Below are positions 3,470-33,218 of a DNA stretch of 33,218 nt, piece by piece. Within the stretch, counting starts at the first letter, position 1, and the number at the start of each line of letters is the position of its first letter. The notes beneath the pieces are model-generated. The model was not told the origin of the DNA. It made no database searches and saw nothing but the letters and a program-made list of their open reading frames with translations. The DNA comes from Trichosphaerium sp. ATCC 40318 (taxonomy: Eukaryota; Protista; Tubulinea), in contig JALMLS010000528.1 in NCBI GenBank assembly GCA_038496445.1, positions 1 through 33,218 of the forward strand, written 5' to 3'. Both the position numbers and the translations under genes were made by a program.

Positions 3470-3724
<255 letters not shown>

Positions 3725-4498: not shown

Positions 4499-5395
4499 TT
4501 ACATCATAGCACACTGTCTATTTTGTTTGATAGGTTTTGATGTAACTGAATCTCGGCGCTTCCTTATCTCTCGTACAAGTTGATAAAAAGCTTCTTCAAC
4601 ATTTTCACGTGTTTTAGCTGATGTCTCAAAAAAAGGAATGCTGTAATGCTTTCCAAGCTCTTCTCCTTCTTCTTTAGTAACTGCTCTTTGTTCTTCTAAA
4701 TCAACTTTATTCCCAACTATTACTAAAGGGACAGAATCTAGATCCTTGACCCTAATCCAATATCAGCAAAAACCTTTTTTGATAAAATAATGTGAAAAGA
4801 AAGTTGACGTTTATTCTTTACTCTAAAAGCTCCCTCAACCTTGGATAGAAGGGGAAATGTTTGTGTAGCACATGTTTGACTATTGGTAGTCTGGCTGTTA
4901 TGGATGCTATGATCCAGGAGGGTAATTGGATTGTCAACTTATCATGTGTTCCGTACCTTCTAACTTGGTCATAGAAATCTGGTAGTTCTTCAAAAGATGC
5001 ACGGCTTGTAATAGCGTAAACAAGTAAAAATCCTTCACCTATTCTCATGAACTGTACGTTAACGAATACGTTAGTTACACATGGCAGCTGACAGAGGTGC
5101 TTACTTGATCACGCATTGCAGTGAATATTTCTGTTCCTGCTACATGAAGAATTTCCAAGAGAAGCGTCTCTTCGTCTACAATAAATGTTTTACTATACCT
5201 ACAGAAGCGTTTTAACGCTTTTGAACAAAAAGACGACTAAACTGCGTAAAAAGTGTTTGTAGTTGATTAAAACGCTTACGAATCTTCTAGGGTAGGGTCG
5301 TATTCATCACTGAAGTGGTTGCTTATTAATTGTCTCGTAAGTGCTGATTTTCCAACACCACCGCTCCCAAAAACAGCTATCCTACATTCAGTCAT
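4499..5395 (-). CDS. Ras-family small GTPase, copy 1 (4 exons, intact, atypical G3 motif)
   Basis: [20 protein letters not shown]…YDPTLEDS|[31 protein letters not shown]|[22 protein letters not shown]…VRR|[18 protein letters not shown]…ETSAK…CAMM*. G1, G2, G4, G5 and the CaaX box are present; three GT-AG introns. Confidence 0.95.
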
Positions 5396-5938
5396 TCAGG
5401 GTGCTTCCCGTTACGTTATAAATTGGTGTTATTGTTGTACTTGACTACATTAGAAAAGTGGTTGATAAAAATAGAATTTTTCAACAAACCCATAGAATTT
5501 CGATTTGACGAAATACTTACTTCCTCATGTTTTCTACTTGTGGACACGATTGTCTATTTCTTCAGCTTTAGAACCCCATTTCTGGTGGTTAACGTTTGTA
5601 GATTCTTCTTCAGTTTGTATTGTGTCGTTAACGAAACTTGTTTGTAATGATCCTGGATAATGCCACGTGGGGCTACCATTGATGACAATATTCAAGATAG
5701 TCTCAACAGGGACCGAAAATAAGTTTGTGATGTCTGAGTTTGTGTCAGGCAACGCGTTTCGACATTGCTATTTCTTTTTACTAATTGCAACAAAAAAACG
5801 ATAGTGGCGGTCAAAGCACTTGTTATTAAGCTAGTTCTGGTAAATGTAATATTTCCAATGATTTGATGTTTGGACCATTATTTGACTCACGTAAATAAAA
5901 CTCACACGTGCGCCATTTTTATTTATCGTTTCTTCGTG

Positions 5939-7619: not shown

Positions 7620-10600
7620 TTTTATTTATGCTTGTAAGTACTTGATTAACAGTTGGATCCTTTAGATTTGTGTTCTTGAATCAAGAAAAAGAAAGAATTG
7701 TTGTTTAGGTGTTGTTTTTTATTTTTTTATGGTTATAATTAGATGGTTCTAAACTAAAAACTCACATGTACATGTTCCACGTCCGAACGCATAATTCTTT
7801 GTCAGTGTTACAGTTTTTAACTCACTTGTGGTCGGATAGGTCCTAGTACAATCTTGGCCATTTGGTTTTGGACACAAGAAACCACCTCCCACATTCTCAC
7901 AAGCTACTGAAGTGCACCTATTAATTCGATGTTGTTAGTGTCAAATAGTAAGAAAAAAAAGTACGTACAAACAACCATCTTGAGTTGGACGGAGAAGAGC
8001 CTGGAGACAAAAAACTAGTTGGGATCCTAATGGAGCCCTTGGTGCTCTTGTTGTAGGTGCAGGTGTTGGTTCAAATGTTGGTTGCATAACACTAACTGGA
8101 GCACTACTAGTAGGTTGTGGTGTTGGTTCCACCGAAGGCTCTTGAGTTGTAGGTGCAGTTGTTGGCGCATCCGTTGGTGGTTCCGTCGTAGGGGCATCTG
8201 TTGGCACATCCGTTGGCGGTTCTGTCGTAGGGGCATCTGTAGGTGGGTTCGATGGAGCAGCTGTTGGTGGAGCCACAGGAGCATTAGTAGGCGCATCTGT
8301 AACTGGAGCGTTTGTAGGGGCATCTGTTGGTGGAGCCACAGGAGCATTCGTTGGAGCATCTGTTGGTGCGTCAGTTTGAGTAGGAGCGTCTGTTGGAGCT
8401 GCTGTTGGCATATCTGTAGGTGGGTTTGTAGGTGGTGCTGTAGGTGTTGAAACAGGGGCAGTGGTAGGTGATAGCGATGGAGTACTCGTTGGTACTAATG
8501 TTGGAGGAGCAACAGGAGCATTAGTTGGAGCATCTGTGAACGGTGCGTTTGTTGGCGGTGCTGTTGGAGAAGCCACAGGAGCATTCGTTGGAGCATCTGT
8601 TGGCGGAGGTACAGGTGCATTCGTTGGAGCGATTGTAGGAGGAGCCGTTGGCGCGTTTGTAGGCGCGTTAGTTGGAGGCGCTGTTGGAGGCGCTGTTGGA
8701 GGTGCTGTTGGAGGTGCTGTTGGAGCGTTGGTTGGAGCTACAGTAGGCGAAAGCGTTGGCGATAATGTTGGTTGTGGTGTGGTTGTTGGCTCTAATGTTG
8801 GTGATGCTGTTGGTTCTGCTGTTGTTGGAGCGTCGGTTGGTGATGACGGTACTGCTGGTTCTATGACTAGTACGATCCCGTTCAAATCTGTTTTAAGTCT
8901 TGTATCACTTCCAGTGTATGACGTTTCGAGTGTAGGCAACTCATCAAGAAACCCCATTGTTCTAATCAAGAAAAAAATAAGATTAGCAATTACACTGTCG
9001 TTGACAAAAAATAATAGCGTATGTTTGGCTGTTATACTTACTCTATGAGCAATATTTCCACTGGCTCACTTGGTGCAGTTATAGATTCGCTGAATTCTAC
9101 AATGATTCTCGAGTCGCCTCCGAAAGGATTGATGACAAATCCAGAAGAAAATGTTCCGCTGGTTTGTATTTCATCAAGCGAAAGGATCTGGAATCCTAGC
9201 GCTCCTCCAGATATAAGAAATATAGATGCCACTGATGCCACAGTATTTGTTTTCTTAAAGAGTACACCATCCTTATTAACAATTATGTTCAAAGGAGATG
9301 GATCCGAATTAGTCAAGTCCTAAAAATAGGTCAAAAATAGTAAAAAATAAAAACCCAAAGCAATACCACGACGCTTGTTAAATTGAATAATCCTTTTCTA
9401 ATTCTCAGTGTGCTCTCTACTCCTGCGTCTACGTTTAATACCACTCCTGCTTCATTTTCTGTGTATAGTATGAGCTGAGAGTCTTCAATGGACGTTGATA
9501 GCATAAATTGCATTGGGAGTATAGTCGCTTCAACCCTTGCTCTAAGAAATGGTCGGTTAATAAACAAGCACCGGGATTTATGTACCCTTCTATTAGTCGC
9601 AGAACTCTATTTATAGCAAGATCTGCAATCTCAGCATATATTTTGGCAAGAATAAGGTCACCAGCAGAAGCAACAGTATTCAAAGTGACATTCACTTCTC
9701 TACTCACTTGCTCTAAAAAAAAAGAAAATATGAGAACCAAAAAAAAGTTATAAACTAGCACGTGCGCGCATAATAATAAAGTAAGTTTTTATATGTGGCG
9801 GTTGTTTTGTTTGAAGGCTATTTTGATGAGAATTTTGTTTCACGCACCGACACGAAGAGGCTGAGAACTTCTCCAGATTATATTAGCATTATCCATTTTT
9901 CCATCAAACGATAGTACATTTTCCACTGAAGTATCAAGATTAACGCTATCGCTTATTGTTACATCAGTAATAGAAGACATCCCCGTGAATCTTAAAACAC
10001 CATAAAATCCAATGAAACCGCCAGTAACAGTGCTGTCCACGCTAGAATTCTGGGCACGGAAAAAAAAAAAGTAAGGAAAGATTTTTTACAAGTGTCTATT
10101 AATATAGACTATGCGCACATACCACTGACATATCAACTGTCACACCGTCTGAAATATTTATATCACCACTGAAAGCAGATAATCCGTTCCTATTTATAAA
10201 CGAAACTGGACCTTCAGCTCTATTCAAAGCACTTCGTTAGCGATAGAAAACAAAAAAACAATGGATGAACAATCATATCTGATATCACGTGCCTTATCAA
10301 TGCGCGTACTATCAATAAATAAGTGTTAGGAATTATGCGAAGTTGTTCTGTTCCCGCTTGTTCTATGAGTGTTTCCAAATTGACAACTTCCTTAAAAAAA
10401 CAATTGGATCATTCGCCAACAAAAAAAAAAAAAAACTTACGATTGGATCATCTGCATTAGAGAAAGGTTCCAATACAATATCTTGATCAATTTCTGGTGC
10501 AGAACGTATATTTGATATTGCTACTACTCTATTTCTGTTTGATCTAAACTCACTGGAAAAAGCGTTGGCATCAAGACTCAACCAGTTTATGAAGACACTC

Positions 10601-18240: not shown

Positions 18241-18522
18241 AGTCAATGCTGCTTATGCATCATTTATTTATCTCCTATTTTAACTTTAGGCATACATTTA
18301 CCTTAAATGCTTCATATCTACTACTACCCCATGCACCTTTTGCACTATTCCAAGGCGTGTTCAAGTCTATCCACATGCCAACCTAATGTTATTCTGTTGT
18401 TTACCATTACAGGCTTGAAAAATCGAATTGCTTTTTCTATTTATAGCCATTCAATGATTTCTTTTCTGAGTCGTTCAAGTGCAACAAACCAGCAATTTAT
18501 AACGTAACGGGAAGCACCTTGG

Positions 18523-19396
18523 ATGGTTGAATATAAGATAGTAGTTATTGGCGATGGTGTAGGTAAATCAGCACTTACAATACAACTTATTCAAAATCAC
18601 TTTGTTGATGAATACGACCCTACCATAGAAGATTCGTAAGTGTTTTTAATCAAACGCTTTTTACGCAGTTTACTCTTCTCTTTGGTTCAAACGTGTTATA
18701 ACGCTTATGTAGGTATTGTAAACTATGTATTGTGGACAAGGAGACACTTCTTTTGGATATTCTTCATACAGCGGGAAGAGAAGAGTACAATGTAATTAAT
18801 GCGTGATCAAGTATCAGCTGAACGCGTATAACTAACGTATTTGTTAACATGTAGTACATGAGAACAGGCGAAGGGTTTTTAATTGTTTACGCCATTACAA
18901 GCCGTGTATCGTTCGAGGAAGTAACAGCTTTATATGACCGAGTTAGAAAGTACGGAACTTTACAAATCTATAGTCCAATTTTACCTTGTGGATCGGCATC
19001 TACGACAGACAGACTACCAATAATCAAACATGTGCTACACAAACATGCCCCTTCTATCCAAGCTTGAGGAGCTTTTAGAGTAAAAGAATAAACGTCAACT
19101 TTCTTTTTCCCATTATTTTATCAAAAAAGGTTTTTGCTGATATTGGATTAGAGTCAAGGATCTAGACACTTTCCCTTCAGTAATAGTTGGGAATAAAGTT
19201 GATTTAGAAGAAGACAGACAAGTTACTAAAGGAGAAGGAGAAGAGCTTGGAAAGCATTACAGCCCTTTTATGAGACATCAGCTAAAACACGTGAAAATGT
19301 CGAAGAAGCTTTTTATCAACTTGTACGAGAGATAAGCAACAAGATTCGATTACATCAAACCCTATTAAACAAAATAGACAGTGTGCTATGATGTAA
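18523..19396 (+). pseudogene. Ras-family GTPase copy 2, inverted duplicate of copy 1, frameshifted
   Basis: Same intron positions, 5' leader (CAATTTATAACGTAACGGGAAGCACC) and CAMM tail as copy 1. One codon is missing in G1 (GDGVGKS), there is a 4-nt insertion at about 18795 giving TGA, and further frameshifts at about 19265 and about 19340. Confidence 0.85.
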
Positions 19397-19454
19397 AAAA
19401 AACAGCTTGCGGGGAATGGACACAGAGCCACAATTTTTCAAGCATTTATTCTCA

Positions 19455-19490
19455 AATGTACCGTAAACAAATACTTGTTTACGGTGCATT
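19455..19490 (+). repeat. 16-bp inverted repeat (hairpin) downstream of Ras copy 2
   Basis: AATGTACCGTAAACAA-ATAC-TTGTTTACGGTGCATT; one U-G wobble if read as + strand RNA. Confidence 0.8.
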
Positions 19491-19920: not shown

Positions 19921-21747
19921 ATGATTTACAACACAACAATGAATTACTGGATGTTTGTTGCCGCATTATTGATGTTCATACCTTATTGTAGTGCCGAGGT
20001 CGTTCTACAACAGAACATTACAACAGATATTACTCTTAAAGCGGAAGAAAGCCCTTATATCATCGCAGATTTGGTAAGAGTCCAACCTTGGGTAAATTTT
20101 ACAATGGAACCTGGCGCGATAATTCAGGGAATTTCTTCTCAGTCAAGCATCTTGTTCTATGGTACAAACGTTCATTTATCGGGAAACAGTACACACAATA
20201 CGGTAGTAACCAATAACGGTTCATTAAACTTTTTCATGTACTTCGAATCAACATCAACTAATCCGTACACGTGGAAATATGCAAATATTTCAGGTTGTTG
20301 GATTACTATCAACCACATGATCTTTTCAATCTCTCATTCTTATGTGTACGCAAGTTTTGAATACTCTTCGAGAACGCTGTTGTTTGAATACGTAACAGGA
20401 GGTGTACGGGTAGTAACAGAACTTGGAAATCTTGTAGTTTCTAACAGCAAGTTAACTGGTTTCTCGAACGGTCTTTCTGTTGTTACTTCCAATGGCCAGT
20501 CATATCCGCTCTTCATAGACAGCAACGTACGATGTTTTCAATGCAATGGTAGATTTGTAAGGAGCAATGTAACCTTAAAGGAGAAGAATGTAATAGTATG
20601 GGGTGCAGTTGATAGCCATTTTGAACTTCAATATAAAGAAAACAGTCAATACGAAGTGAAGCTAAGACCAATAATATCAGATATACGAAACAACACCTTT
20701 CGCGGAACAGGATGGATATCAACTGCATTAGACAACGCAACTCCGTATAGCACTTCAGACAACGTCATGAATGTATCTAGAATTGATATAGACTACAACG
20801 TAAACGTGACATATAATAACATTTCAGCAGATTTAATTTTTCTTAGTACCAGAAATTTTGTACAAAGTAATACTTTTATTGCAAGACAATACATCGCTAG
20901 TTACGGACACTCAAAACCAAATAGATTCTCTGCACCAAAGTATTATACACAAGGCGATATTCACAACAGCGATTTTAGCTTGGAAATGCGCGTAATAGCA
21001 CAGAGTAACAATGTGGATATCAGTAACAATTACTGGAGTACAACTGATTTAGGAGAAATTAAAGATCGTATATCCTGTGACCATATGTGTGTAAACAATT
21101 CTTTTGTATTCGAGCCGATAAGAACTCAGCACGTGATACTACCACCGGAAGCTCCTTTACCTCCGCCACCAACAACAGTTGTACCTACAACATTATCTCC
21201 TACAACAATACCTCCTACAACAGCACCACCAACAACGGAAGCACCAACAACGGAAGCACCAACAACGGAAGCACCTACAACACTTGTTCCTATAACAGCG
21301 CCGCCTACAACAGCATCACCAACGACAGCACCACCAATAACAGTATCACCAACAGCAAGTGTACCTACAACGTTATCTCCTACGACAACATGGCCAACAA
21401 CACTACGGCCAACATCACCTCCAACAATCCCTCCAACAACATTAACACCTACAACAATTGTTCCAACGACCACGCATCCTACACCGTTACGGCCAACAAC
21501 ACAACCAGTAGCGCCTACAAGCACACAAGTACCAACAACAGCTTCACCTACTGGACCTCAACAACCTCCTGCTGAATCTACTGGCAAACAACGAAACAAA
21601 AACCTGTATGTAGGTTTGGTTTTGGCACTTTGTGCAGCTTTGGTTATTTTCGTTTCAAGTATGATTGTTTTCTTTTACTGTAAAAAGAAACGTGCGCTTG
21701 TAAACGATGAACCTGAGTATGACCTTTTAAGTGACACGCAACTTTGA
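19921..21747 (+). CDS. Intronless type I membrane protein: pectin-lyase-like right-handed beta-helix, PT stalk, TM helix, short tail
   Basis: Signal peptide (the true start is probably the ATG at 19939); SPYIIADLVRVQPWVNFTMEPGAII and NNYWSTTDLGEIKDRI..D motifs; N/I-rich beta-helix; PTT repeats at about 21140-21570; TM LYVGLVLALCAALVIFVSSMIVFFYC; tail …YDLLSDTQL. Confidence 0.85.
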   Translation: MIYNTTMNYWMFVAALLMFIPYCSAEVVLQQNITTDITLKAEESPYIIADLVRVQPWVNFTMEPGAIIQGISSQSSILFYGTNVHLSGNSTHNTVVTNNGSLNFFMYFESTSTNPYTWKYANISGCWITINHMIFSISHSYVYASFEYSSRTLLFEYVTGGVRVVTELGNLVVSNSKLTGFSNGLSVVTSNGQSYPLFIDSNVRCFQCNGRFVRSNVTLKEKNVIVWGAVDSHFELQYKENSQYEVKLRPIISDIRNNTFRGTGWISTALDNATPYSTSDNVMNVSRIDIDYNVNVTYNNISADLIFLSTRNFVQSNTFIARQYIASYGHSKPNRFSAPKYYTQGDIHNSDFSLEMRVIAQSNNVDISNNYWSTTDLGEIKDRISCDHMCVNNSFVFEPIRTQHVILPPEAPLPPPPTTVVPTTLSPTTIPPTTAPPTTEAPTTEAPTTEAPTTLVPITAPPTTASPTTAPPITVSPTASVPTTLSPTTTWPTTLRPTSPPTIPPTTLTPTTIVPTTTHPTPLRPTTQPVAPTSTQVPTTASPTGPQQPPAESTGKQRNKNLYVGLVLALCAALVIFVSSMIVFFYCKKKRALVNDEPEYDLLSDTQL

Positions 21748-22089
21748 AACCTATACAAAACCAAGACAATAAACTGTTGAACACCTTAACAAACTCCTAA
21801 ACCTTTTGCCTATTTCAGTTGCTATCTCGTTCCGTTTTGTTGAATGACGCTCACTATAATCTCCATATTGCAACACCTCAGTAATTTCTTACGCTCCTAC
21901 CTAAAGTTTATTCTTGTGCTTGATATACATTTGCAAATATTCATAGGTGTTTGGTGACAATGCCAATTTGAGAACTTGTGTTTGAGAAAAATGAAAGGGT
22001 TGCCAACTATAACGATAAATAATTTACATTGTAATCTTTGATTTTGATTTAACTTGTCAAAAGTACAGTTTGTGAAATTACCAAATTTT

Positions 22090-23020
22090 TTACTTTAGTT
22101 GGCCATCCTCATACCATCGTTTCTTTTCGCCATGCCGTTTATTCTCAATCCAGAAGCTGTGTTCCTTAAGTTGTCCATTCTCATACCACTTTTTTTTTTT
22201 ACCATGCTTTTTACCATCGACCCACATACATTGTCCCTTAAGTTGACCACTTTCAAACCAATATTTTGCTTCACCATGTTGTTTACCATCTACCCAAATG
22301 CATTGTTCCTTTTGTTGTCCATTCTCATACCACTTTTTTTTTTCACCATGCTTTTTACCATCAACCCACATACATTGTCCCTTAAGTTGTCCACTTTCAA
22401 ACCAATCTTTACGTTCACCATGTTGTTTACCATCTACCCACATGCGTTGTTCTTTCAGTTGTCCATTCTCATGCCATGTTTTATCATGACCATGTTGTTG
22501 GTCATGAGCCCATATGCTGTAGTCCTTAAGTTGTCCATTCTCATACCATCCCTTACTATCACCATGTTGCTTACCATTAACACACGTCCACTGTTCCATA
22601 AGTTGTCCATTCTCATACCATCCTTTACATTTGCCATGCTGTTTACCATCAAGCCACATCCCGTGTTCCTTCCAATTTCCACTCTTATAAAATCGTATCC
22701 ATGCACCTTTCTTTTGTAACAGTTTGTCAAAATGTGTATTAATAGCAGCTCTCTTTGATAGCACGTGAAATTTGGTGAAGACTTCAGCATTGAAAGTACA
22801 AATATACTTTTGAAGTTCACATGGAATATCTAGTAAAGTCAAAGGGCCCAATGCCAATTCACAGTTTATGTTGATAAGCTTTGCACTAGACTGTAAAAAC
22901 TTAGACAAAAAAGGCAAACAAAACGTTTGGGCAGCTCGCTTTTGACAGTTTCTTAGAATTTCGGAAAAAGCGAGTTTGAAAAATTATTGCTTTGTCTGTC
23001 AGTACGGTTTCTCGGTACAT
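22090..23020 (-). CDS. F-box-like N-terminus + MORN-variant (YwqK-like) repeat protein
   Basis: LLDIPCELQKYI (F-box-like) followed by about eight 24-aa repeats of G(K)xHGxxKxWYENGQLK. A likely ATG at 23020 is joined by a 34-nt intron ending TTTTACAG; the ORF-track start at 22917 is a TTG. Confidence 0.85.
22160..22470 (-). repeat. Recent 144-nt (two-repeat-unit) tandem duplication within the MORN array
   Basis: GTTGTCCATTCTCATACCAC recurs at 22170 and 22314 with near-identical intervening sequence; the basic period is 72 nt. Confidence 0.85.
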
Positions 23021-32661: not shown

Positions 32662-33218
32662 ATGGCTGCCTATTCCTCACAAGTTGAGCCTGGAGTGAAT
32701 AACTATAAACTTGTCGTATTGGGCCCTACAGGGGTTGGAAAATCAGCAACATCAATACAATTCATTCAAAACATATTTGTACCAGATTCGGACCCAACCC
32801 TAGACGATTCGTGAGCACGGAGCTTTTTAACCTTTAAAAAGTCTAAAACACCTCTAAACGCTCACCCACGCGCTAAGGTATCGTAAGCAAGTCACTATAG
32901 ACGACGAAACTGCCGTACTTGATGTTCTAGACACAGTTGACTCTGACGACGACTACTCGAGTATCCCGCACATGGTAATTAAATAAATCGTTTTTAGGCT
33001 GAACTAATCTAACAGATTGTAGTACATACGAGGTGGTGAAGGCTTTATTTTCTGTATATCACAGACAGACTGTCATTTGAAATAATGCCATACTTATTTC
33101 ACCAGGTTTACAGGTGACAAAACTAAAGTCTTTGCCTAGGTCTACGACACTAAATATTTTGTGTACAGAGTAAAAGACTTGGATGCTAATACAGACAAAA
33201 TTCCTATTGTACTTGTAG
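32662..33218 (+). CDS. Ras-family GTPase copy 3 (divergent; partial, runs off the window; one frameshift)
   Basis: [36 protein letters not shown]|[32 protein letters not shown]|[10 protein letters not shown]…[shift at about 33055]ITDRLSFE…VYR|[16 protein letters not shown]. Same intron positions as copies 1 and 2. Confidence 0.85.

What the first reader, a model, noticed from the sequence alone, without database searches (positions are those of the whole stretch)
4499..5395. Intact, prenylatable Ras with D57H/T58V/Q61T: candidate natural dominant-negative, pseudo-GTPase or decoy
Seen: G3 reads LHVAGTE instead of LDTAGQE (numbering matches HRAS exactly), while G1, T35, NKxD, SAK and CaaX are intact. 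Copy 2 shares H57 (LHTAGRE), so the change predates the duplication and is unlikely to be a sequencing error. Known: D57 positions Mg2+, D57 mutants act as GEF-sequestering dominant negatives, and Q61 is catalytic. Inference: an HxxG Ras subfamily that dampens Ras signalling or uses different chemistry.
Basis: partly seen in the sequence, partly recalled or inferred. Interest (0 to 1): 0.7.

Follow-up and report, generated by a model that had tools for sequence, protein, structure and literature searches.

The report
Divergent Ras gene lacking magnesium-site aspartate
An amoeba gene encodes an otherwise complete, membrane-anchorable Ras switch protein in which two key chemical residues (Asp57 and Gln61) are replaced; it is the only intact member of a local trio of Ras copies, and whether it is expressed, or works as a brake on Ras signalling, could not be tested.

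Summary
A four-exon gene on the minus strand (5395..4499, 185 codons, GT-AG introns) encodes a classical Ras. G1 (GSGGVGKS), T35, G60, NKVD, SAK and a CAMM CaaX box are intact, but G3 reads H57-V58-A59-G60-T61.

Copy 2 (18523..19396, +) shares the same CAT codon for H57 and also lacks Q61. A third, also disrupted, Ras gene lies at the window's end. T61 is the normal Rap residue, so it is unusual only for a Ras proper.

None of about 370 G3 motifs in the nearest Ras relatives I could fetch has His at position 57. No "HxxG subfamily" was found beyond these two copies.

Copy 1 has no indel or stop where neutral decay predicts several. Pairwise dN/dS is about 0.4-0.7. It is nonetheless the faster-evolving copy (17 versus 5 polarised changes) and departs from 25 of 106 near-invariant Ras columns.

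Best reading (about 0.5): a selectively maintained but relaxed, non-cycling Ras-like protein. Main rival (about 0.35): a duplicate early in decay.

The spliced product was never searched or folded as one piece. The scan noted other crippled Ras domains in this genome, but not this one.

The parts
5280..5395 (-). Copy 1 exon 1: M1 to the first two bases of codon 39. Holds G1 (GSGGVGKS) and switch I with T35.
   Evidence: Pfam Ras 6.7e-07. Aligns to HRAS 1-38 at 1.2e-13.
5199..5279 (-). Copy 1 intron 1 (81 nt, GTAAGC..TGTAG).
   Evidence: Alignable to intron 1 of copy 2, 9 mismatches in 75 aligned bases.
5105..5198 (-). Copy 1 exon 2: residues 39/40-70. Holds the altered G3 (LHVAGTE); H57 codon at 5146..5144, T61 codon at 5134..5132.
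   Evidence: Aligns to HRAS 40-70 with the His opposite D57. No Pfam match on its own.
5052..5104 (-). Copy 1 intron 2 (53 nt), with an ACTAAC branch-point-like motif shared with copy 2.
4957..5051 (-). Copy 1 exon 3: residues 71-101/102 (FMRIGEGF...).
   Evidence: Pfam Ras 3.6e-05. Best PDB matches are R-Ras2, M-Ras and K-Ras.
4752..4956 (-). Copy 1 intron 3 (205 nt). Its 3' half is about 93% identical to copy 2; its 5' half is much more diverged.
4499..4751 (-). Copy 1 exon 4: residues 102/103-185 plus the stop. Holds NKVD, ETSAK, a basic tail and the CAMM CaaX box.
   Evidence: Pfam Ras 2.6e-19. Best PDB match is S. rosetta Ras 5wdr at 1e-22.
18523..19396 (+). Copy 2: a Ras pseudogene with the same exon structure and H57 (CAT at 18765..18767; LHTAGRE). 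Lesions: a 3-nt deletion in the P-loop (about 18550/18551), a 4-nt TAAT duplication in exon 2 (about 18793..18796), and 4-nt deletions in exon 4 (about 19262/19263 and 19339/19340).
   Evidence: The duplicated unit runs from about 60 nt upstream of the ATG to the stop.
32662..33218 (+). Copy 3: a more distant Ras-family gene that runs off the window. D57 is kept, but G3 reads LDTVDSDDD (A59V, G60D, Q61S). The P-loop is GPTGVGKS. Exon 3 is 91 nt where copies 1 and 2 have 95, so the frame breaks.

Best explanation
Copy 1 is a lineage-specific, fast-evolving paralogue of classical Ras in a marine amoeba (Trichosphaerium, according to earlier notes of this scan). It is the only intact member of a local trio of Ras genes.

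Shown:
- It keeps an open four-exon frame.
- It keeps the phosphate loop, T35, G60, the guanine-specificity motifs and a farnesylation-type CaaX box.
- His replaces the Asp that holds the magnesium-bound water (D57).
- Thr replaces the catalytic Gln (Q61).
- Both losses predate the split from copy 2.

Inferred:
- The protein, if made, still folds as Ras and goes to membranes.
- It binds Mg2+ and nucleotide weakly.
- RasGAP-type chemistry cannot switch it off.
- It would therefore act as a non-cycling Ras-like protein, that is, a nucleotide-site-degenerate 'pseudo-GTPase' kind, not a normal switch.
- Its most plausible activity is competition for exchange factors or effectors of the canonical Ras proteins. 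Of all these points, this one is the least supported.
For: Gene model and motifs.

H57 is shared through the identical CAT codon. Codon 61 is ACA in copy 1 and AGA in copy 2, so neither is Gln.

Frame maintenance:
- All four coding indels between the copies lie in copy 2 and none in copy 1.
- The introns carry 12 indel events in 339 nt. That predicts about 10 coding indels per lineage if copy 1 were neutral, giving P(0) of about 1e-4.
- Even at copy 2's own rate of 4, P(0) is about 0.02.
- P(no stop after 40 random substitutions) is about 0.22.

Substitution rates: pairwise dN/dS is 0.43 in exons 1-3 and 0.69 in exon 4.

After the split, the copy 2 lineage gained only 5 polarised amino-acid changes despite a synonymous divergence of 0.4-0.6 in exons 1-3. 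An H57 Ras was therefore kept under constraint for a long time.

Known biochemistry:
- Rac2 D57N lowers GTP binding and is dominant-negative (PMC5927519).
- S17 and D57 mutations raise nucleotide dissociation in Ras (PMC4182752).
- Q61 positions the attacking water (PMC5538825).
Against:
- No relative with His57 among 299 G3 motifs of fetched proteins or 71 of metagenome loci.
- Copy 1 is more derived than the pseudogene: 17 versus 5 polarised changes, binomial p 0.017.
- It departs from the consensus at 25 of 106 columns that are at least 90% conserved in 211 Ras homologues. At 14 of these it carries residues never seen in them, including Y4C, I21R, I36L, T58V, E63I and Y71F.
- Both neighbouring Ras copies are disrupted.
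- The changes at E63, Y64 and Y71 touch the surface that exchange factors use (Tyr64 is called crucial for GEF binding in PMC5538825). That weakens the GEF-trap idea specifically.
- The neutral yardstick is uncertain. Synonymous sites of exons 1-3 are three times more diverged than the introns (Fisher p 0.0004).
Confidence: 0.5

Rival explanations
1. Copy 1 is a redundant duplicate early in decay. Selection was released recently, and amino-acid changes are accumulating at once-invariant Ras positions. The frame is still open only because no disabling hit has occurred yet.
For: - The sister copy and the third Ras gene in the same 33 kb are both disrupted.
- Copy 1 carries 17 derived changes against 5 in copy 2, and departs from 25 of 106 near-invariant columns.
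- If the introns rather than synonymous sites are taken as the neutral yardstick, the nonsynonymous rate on copy 1's lineage is roughly neutral. This is my estimate.
- There is no H57 relative elsewhere and no expression evidence.
Against: - Copy 1 has no indel and no stop in 555 coding bases, while copy 2 gained four indels and the introns twelve.
- All nucleotide-contact motifs other than D57 and Q61, and the CaaX box, are intact.
- dN/dS measured against synonymous sites is 0.4-0.7, not 1.
Confidence: 0.35
2. Copy 1 is a working GTPase switch with altered chemistry. His57 still holds the magnesium-bound water, or binds a metal directly. Thr61 makes it a substrate for a RapGAP-type activator that supplies its own catalytic residue, as in Rap.
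For: - T61 is the native Rap residue, and Rap is hydrolysed without a catalytic Gln (PMC2265111).
- G1, T35, G60, NKVD and SAK are intact.
- An H57 state persisted under constraint on the copy 2 lineage.
Against: - All exon pieces match H/K/N-Ras, R-Ras/M-Ras and S. rosetta Ras best. No Rap entry is among the 60 rows that each of these searches shows.
- D30-E31 is Ras-like.
- Replacing the equivalent Asp even with Asn cripples GTP binding in Rac2 (PMC5927519).
- No natural small GTPase with His at this position turned up in any search here.
Confidence: 0.1
3. The exons of one copy were overwritten in patches by gene conversion from other Ras paralogues elsewhere in the genome. The apparent rates and the polarisation would then be artefacts. 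H57 would also be carried by further, unseen family members.
For: - Synonymous divergence in exons 1-3 (18 differences in 42.5 sites) is three times the divergence of the flanking introns (17 in 118). Exon 4 and the 3' half of intron 3 are about 93-95% identical.
- This mosaic points to at least one conversion event.
Against: - Short introns are packed with splice signals, so they underestimate the neutral rate.
- Three separate exon-limited tracts would be needed.
- The rest of the genome could not be searched, so no donor is known.
Confidence: 0.05

Closest known systems
Classical Ras (H/K/N-Ras; Salpingoeca rosetta Ras, PDB 5wdr; Dictyostelium RasG/RasD-type proteins)
   Same: Same length and numbering through G3. 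Same G1, switch I with T35, G60, NKxD, SAK, and a basic tail with CaaX. These are the best sequence matches for every exon.
   Different: H57, V58, T61, I63 and F64 in G3/switch II, plus 20 further departures from columns that are at least 90% conserved in 211 homologues. None of those homologues has anything but D57, T58, Q61 and E63.
Rap1/Rap2
   Same: Thr at position 61 in place of the catalytic Gln (PMC2265111).
   Different: The rest of the protein matches Ras proper, not Rap. Rap keeps D57.
Engineered or disease mutants of the G3 Asp (Rac2 D57N; Ras S17/D57 mutants)
   Same: Loss of the carboxylate that organises the Mg2+ site. The reported consequences are lower GTP binding, faster nucleotide release and dominant inhibition (PMC5927519, PMC4182752).
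   Different: Those are single changes in an otherwise wild-type protein. Here the residue is His, the change is evolutionarily fixed, and the GEF-contact residues in switch II have also changed.
GTPase-defective or pseudo-GTPase members of the Ras superfamily (RhoH, Rnd/RhoE, RhoBTB; class i pseudoGTPases such as AAGAB)
   Same: Ras fold retained with catalytic positions replaced (PMC5927519, PMC12490416).
   Different: RhoH and Rnd lose G12 and Q61 but keep D57 and stay GTP-bound. Class i pseudoGTPases have lost most G motifs. Copy 1 keeps G1, G2, G4 and G5 and loses only the G3 Asp and Q61.
Other crippled Ras domains noted by this scan in the same genome (F-box-Ras fusions with K16V or a lengthened P-loop)
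   Same: Same organism, a Ras-derived domain and a degenerate nucleotide site. This suggests the amoeba tolerates or uses non-cycling Ras folds.
   Different: Those are fusions without CaaX. This is a stand-alone, CaaX-bearing Ras with an intact P-loop. I did not re-check those notes.

Membership tests
Ras family small GTPase (Pfam PF00071), classical Ras subgroup | Ras-type G domain recognised by the family profile | tested here: met
   PF00071 matches exon 1 (6.7e-07), exon 3 (3.6e-05) and exon 4 (2.6e-19). Exon 2 alone gives no match.
Ras family small GTPase (Pfam PF00071), classical Ras subgroup | G1 P-loop GxxxxGK[ST] | tested here: met
   GSGGVGKS at residues 10-17.
Ras family small GTPase (Pfam PF00071), classical Ras subgroup | G2 / effector loop YDPTIEDSY with T35 | tested here: met
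   YDPTLEDS(Y); T35 present, I36L.
Ras family small GTPase (Pfam PF00071), classical Ras subgroup | G3 DxxGQ (D57 at the Mg2+ site, G60, catalytic Q61) | tested here: not met
   HVAGT: G60 is kept, D57 and Q61 are replaced. All 211 aligned homologues have D57 and Q61.
Ras family small GTPase (Pfam PF00071), classical Ras subgroup | G4 NKxD and G5 SAK guanine-specificity motifs | tested here: met
   NKVD and ETSAK in exon 4.
Ras family small GTPase (Pfam PF00071), classical Ras subgroup | C-terminal CaaX prenylation box | tested here: met
   The protein ends in CAMM. By established CaaX rules, X = Met predicts farnesylation. The modification itself was not tested.
Ras family small GTPase (Pfam PF00071), classical Ras subgroup | GTP binding and GAP-sensitive hydrolysis cycle | not testable with these tools
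   Needs purified protein.
Rap subfamily | Thr61, together with overall best similarity to Rap | tested here: not met
   T61 is present, but the 60 rows shown for each exon's PDB search are H/K/N-Ras, R-Ras2, M-Ras, RERG, Rit1 and S. rosetta Ras; none is Rap.
Pseudo-GTPase (catalytically inactive GTPase fold) | GTPase fold with catalytic residues lost | tested here: inconclusive
   By sequence, D57 and Q61 are lost and the other motifs are kept. The fold was not modelled because the spliced product has no reference.
Pseudo-GTPase (catalytically inactive GTPase fold) | Demonstrated lack of hydrolysis and/or nucleotide binding | not testable with these tools
   Biochemical assay required.
   There are only two H57 copies, and one is a pseudogene. 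None was found among 299 protein and 71 metagenome G3 motifs. Caveat: the rest of this genome could not be searched, and the listings are capped.
Expressed gene | Spliced transcripts covering the three junctions | not testable with these tools

The most novel reading that the evidence does not exclude
A His57/Thr61 Ras is a selectively maintained, farnesylated, natural interfering Ras. It would act as a built-in GEF or effector trap that tunes canonical Ras signalling in this amoeba. Alternatively, it could be a Ras whose metal site has been rebuilt around a histidine. No natural Ras-family protein with His at the G3 Asp position turned up in any search here.
Probability: 0.15. Interest if true: 0.65.

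Novelty: new variant of a known kind. Interest (0 to 1): 0.33.

Why it matters
The G3 aspartate is among the most conserved residues of all P-loop GTPases, and replacing it in the laboratory or in patients gives interfering proteins. A naturally fixed, selectively kept His57 Ras would be a ready-made example of a genome encoding its own dominant-negative or non-cycling Ras. It would also give a simple system for asking what a Ras fold can do without a normal magnesium site. If instead it is a duplicate on its way out, it is an ordinary product of birth-and-death evolution in a Ras-rich amoeba genome.

Tried and rejected

2. Exhaustive representative search with exon 4: 18,926 hits, best identity 69%, none close and none with H57.

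3. Word search with exon 4 alone: only fragments, at most 72% identity.

4. Two profile word searches. Each exon was a separate row, by reference, beside full-length Ras scaffolds (A4, A5). The listings are capped at 120 and filled with canonical Ras. A local check showed that copy 1's own product would score only about 286-300 bits against A5, at the listing cut-off of 303. These searches therefore cannot show that the protein or its close kin are absent.

5. Alignments with a single scaffold (A3, A6) misplaced exons 2 and 4 and were discarded.

6. The look-up of encoding contigs for two intronless neighbours, the ubiquitin-like ORF and the 608-aa ORF: not on record. This genome's genes are apparently not in that collection.

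7. Metagenome scan with exon 4: nearest loci 67% identical, all with D57.

8. Earlier-findings look-ups by place, by sequence and by several word sets gave nothing on this locus.

9. The deep-mutational-scan paper's supplements hold no D57H entry.

10. Rejected: a Rap identity, because only T61 fits. Also rejected: sequencing error, because the codon is shared, and a retrocopy origin, because the introns are duplicated too.

11. P0062 looked like a vertebrate K-Ras-type sequence, so I dropped it from all later searches.

12. Left out by rule: joining the four exons into one product for any search, exact-sequence look-up or structure prediction.

Full report
**What is there**

The stated interval holds a four-exon gene on the minus strand. 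Translating the three frames and locating the junctions gives these exons:
- exon 1: 5395..5280
- exon 2: 5198..5105
- exon 3: 5051..4957
- exon 4: 4751..4499

The introns are 81, 53 and 205 nt and all are GT..AG. An in-frame stop lies directly upstream of the ATG. The product has 185 codons.

The joined product was never sent to a search, an exact-sequence look-up or a fold. Local statistics were also done exon by exon.

Pfam Ras (PF00071) matches exons 1, 3 and 4. Exon 2, which carries the odd G3, matches nothing on its own.

Against solved structures:
- Exon 1 aligns to HRAS 1-38.
- Exon 2 aligns to HRAS 40-70.
- Exon 3 aligns to R-Ras2, M-Ras, K-Ras and H-Ras at about residues 71-101.
- Exon 4 matches Salpingoeca rosetta Ras 5wdr best (1e-22), then K-Ras 103-177.

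This is therefore a Ras proper, and HRAS numbering applies through G3.

**The observation**

G3 reads L-H57-V58-A59-G60-T61-E62. The following are intact:
- G1 (GSGGVGKS)
- T35 within YDPTLEDS
- NKVD
- ETSAK
- a basic tail ending in CAMM

By the established CaaX rules, X = Met predicts farnesylation.

One correction of emphasis is needed. Thr61 is the normal residue of Rap, which is hydrolysed with RapGAP without a catalytic Gln (PMC2265111). T61 is therefore unusual only in a Ras proper. The truly rare change is His for the G3 Asp.

**The other copies**

A motif scan and translation confirm a second copy at 18523..19396 on the plus strand. It reads LHTAGRE and uses the same CAT codon for H57.

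DNA alignment shows that the duplicated unit runs from about 60 nt upstream of the ATG to the stop, introns included. It is a DNA-level inverted duplication, not a retrocopy.

Copy 2 is a pseudogene. Relative to copy 1 and to every Ras homologue it has four lesions:
- a 3-nt deletion that shortens the P-loop
- a 4-nt TAAT duplication in exon 2
- two 4-nt deletions in exon 4, which put the SAK segment and the CaaX segment in different frames

At codon 61 the copies read ACA and AGA, so their ancestor was already non-Gln.

A profile scan of all six frames then found a third Ras-family gene at 32662..33218, which runs off the window. It has these features:
- the same intron phases as copies 1 and 2
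- D57 retained
- G3 reading LDTVDSDDD (G60D)
- an altered P-loop and switch I
- a 91-nt exon 3 where the other two copies have 95, which breaks the frame

The window therefore holds three Ras genes, and only copy 1 is intact.

**Is there an HxxG clade?**

I could not find one.
- The exhaustive representative search with exon 4 gave 18,926 hits. The best identity was 69%.
- The three word searches brought the total to 402 fetched proteins. All 299 recognisable G3 motifs have Asp.
- A metagenome scan with exon 4 returned 80 loci, at most 67% identical. All 71 of their G3 motifs have Asp.

These negatives have limits.
- Listings are capped. Copy 1's own product would score only about 286-300 bits against my profile, at the cut-off of 303.
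- Two intronless neighbouring ORFs are not on record in the gene-position collection. This organism's genes seem to be missing from it.
- The rest of this genome could not be searched.

What the searches do show is that His57 is not a feature of the nearest known Ras relatives.

**Selection or decay?**

Pairwise dN/dS between the copies is 0.43 in exons 1-3 (dS 0.42) and 0.69 in exon 4 (dS 0.11).

The two halves differ in age. From the middle of intron 3 to the stop, the copies are 89-95% identical. Upstream they are 82-84% identical. This points to a later conversion of the 3' part.

I polarised the differences with an alignment of 211 Ras homologues:
- 17 changes are derived in copy 1
- 5 are derived in copy 2
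- 19 are ambiguous
- binomial p is 0.017

Copy 1 departs from the consensus at 25 of 106 columns that are at least 90% conserved. Copy 2 does so at 16 of 100.

Both copies share L6I, I46V, D57H, I100V, C118V, A135G and F138Y. Both are also non-canonical at positions 41, 43, 61 and 65.

The changes private to copy 1 cluster in the first 74 residues: Y4C, K5R, V7A, G11S, I21R, Q25S, V29S, I36L, D54E, T58V, E63I, Y64F, Y71F and T74I. This is the half of the protein that holds the P-loop and both switch regions.

Two inferences follow.

1. The copy 2 lineage changed little at the protein level while synonymous sites diverged by 0.4-0.6. An H57, non-Q61 Ras was therefore held under constraint for a good while before copy 2 died.

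2. Copy 1 evolves faster than a typical Ras but has kept its frame.
   - The introns show 12 indel events in 339 nt.
   - That rate predicts about 10 coding indels per lineage under neutrality. Copy 2 has 4 and copy 1 has none.
   - P(0) is about 1e-4 at the intron rate and about 0.02 at copy 2's rate.
   - The chance of no stop after 40 random substitutions is about 0.22.

Together these argue that copy 1 has been under selection for an open frame for most of its history, with relaxed constraint on many formerly invariant positions.

**An unresolved point**

Purely synonymous differences in exons 1-3 number 18 in 42.5 sites. That is three times the divergence of introns 1 and 2, which is 17 in 118 (Fisher p 0.0004).

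Short introns packed with splice signals explain part of this. Both copies share an ACTAAC-like motif in intron 2. Exon-limited conversion from unseen paralogues is the alternative.

If the introns rather than synonymous sites are taken as the neutral yardstick, copy 1's nonsynonymous rate looks close to neutral. For this reason I keep the decay hypothesis at about one third.

**Mechanism**

The following is established knowledge.
- D57 organises the Mg2+ site and interacts with T35. Mutations of S17 and D57 raise nucleotide dissociation in Ras (PMC4182752).
- The equivalent Rac2 D57N lowers GTP binding and is dominant-negative in patients (PMC5927519).
- Q61 positions the attacking water. Tyr64 is crucial for GEF binding (PMC5538825).

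Inference: a protein with H57, V58, T61, I63 and F64, but with intact G1, G2, G4, G5 and CaaX, should fold, reach membranes and bind guanine nucleotide only weakly. It should not be switched off by RasGAP chemistry.

Whether it traps exchange factors is doubtful, because the switch II and helix 1 residues that GEFs contact have also changed.

A working switch that uses His57 together with a RapGAP-type activator cannot be excluded.

**Context and identity of the organism**

Earlier notes of this scan call the genome a marine amoeba, Trichosphaerium. They also list several crippled Ras domains (F-box-Ras fusions) elsewhere in it. I did not re-test those notes.

The window's GC content (about 36-38%) and its short introns agree with the published draft genome, which has 37.7% GC and a mean intron of 75 bp (PMC10521059).

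**Verdict**

- The reading is partly supported. The change is old and real, and its predicted effect rests on sound precedent.
- There is no evidence for a subfamily, for expression or for any activity.
- The only sister copy is dead, and a further disrupted Ras gene lies nearby.
- I rate this a new variant of a known kind (an atypical, possibly pseudo-GTPase Ras) of moderate-to-low interest until expression and paralogue data are in.

Noticed in passing
window 32662..33218 (+): A third Ras-family gene runs off the window end. It has an 11-residue N-terminal extension. The P-loop is GPTGVGKS and switch I is [11 protein letters not shown]3 reads LDTVDSDDD (D57 kept, G60D). Exon 3 is 4 nt shorter than in copies 1 and 2, so the frame breaks. 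It is probably another Ras pseudogene.
   Followed up: partly
window 18523..19396 (+): The 4-nt TAAT duplication in exon 2 of copy 2 creates a GTAATT that could act as a new splice donor and keep the frame while dropping the AMRDQ segment. The two 4-nt deletions in exon 4 would still truncate the product.
   Followed up: no
window 4499..5460 versus 18458..19455: Synonymous sites of exons 1-3 are about three times more diverged between the copies than the introns between them. Exon 4 and the 3' half of intron 3 are 93-95% identical. The pair is a mosaic of older and recently homogenised segments; the cause is unexplained.
   Followed up: partly
window 3470..3703 (-): An intronless 77-residue ubiquitin-family ORF (Pfam ubiquitin 1.3e-33) lies about 800 nt downstream of the Ras gene on the same strand. 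It is a single unit ending in GGC and diverges from canonical ubiquitin at several positions.
   Followed up: partly
window 7941..8969 (-): A GC-rich (51%), strongly GC-skewed stretch of imperfect short repeats encodes a PT-type disordered repeat ORF (Pfam PT 3.5e-17).
   Followed up: partly
window 19921..21747 (+): A 608-residue intronless ORF lies just downstream of copy 2. It has a signal-peptide-like start, many N-x-S/T sites, a long Pro/Thr stalk, one transmembrane segment and a short tail. It has no Pfam match and is not on record in the gene-position collection.
   Followed up: partly
window 22021..22917 (-): A tandem array of 72-nt units encodes MORN-variant repeats (Pfam MORN_2 9.3e-31).
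   Followed up: partly
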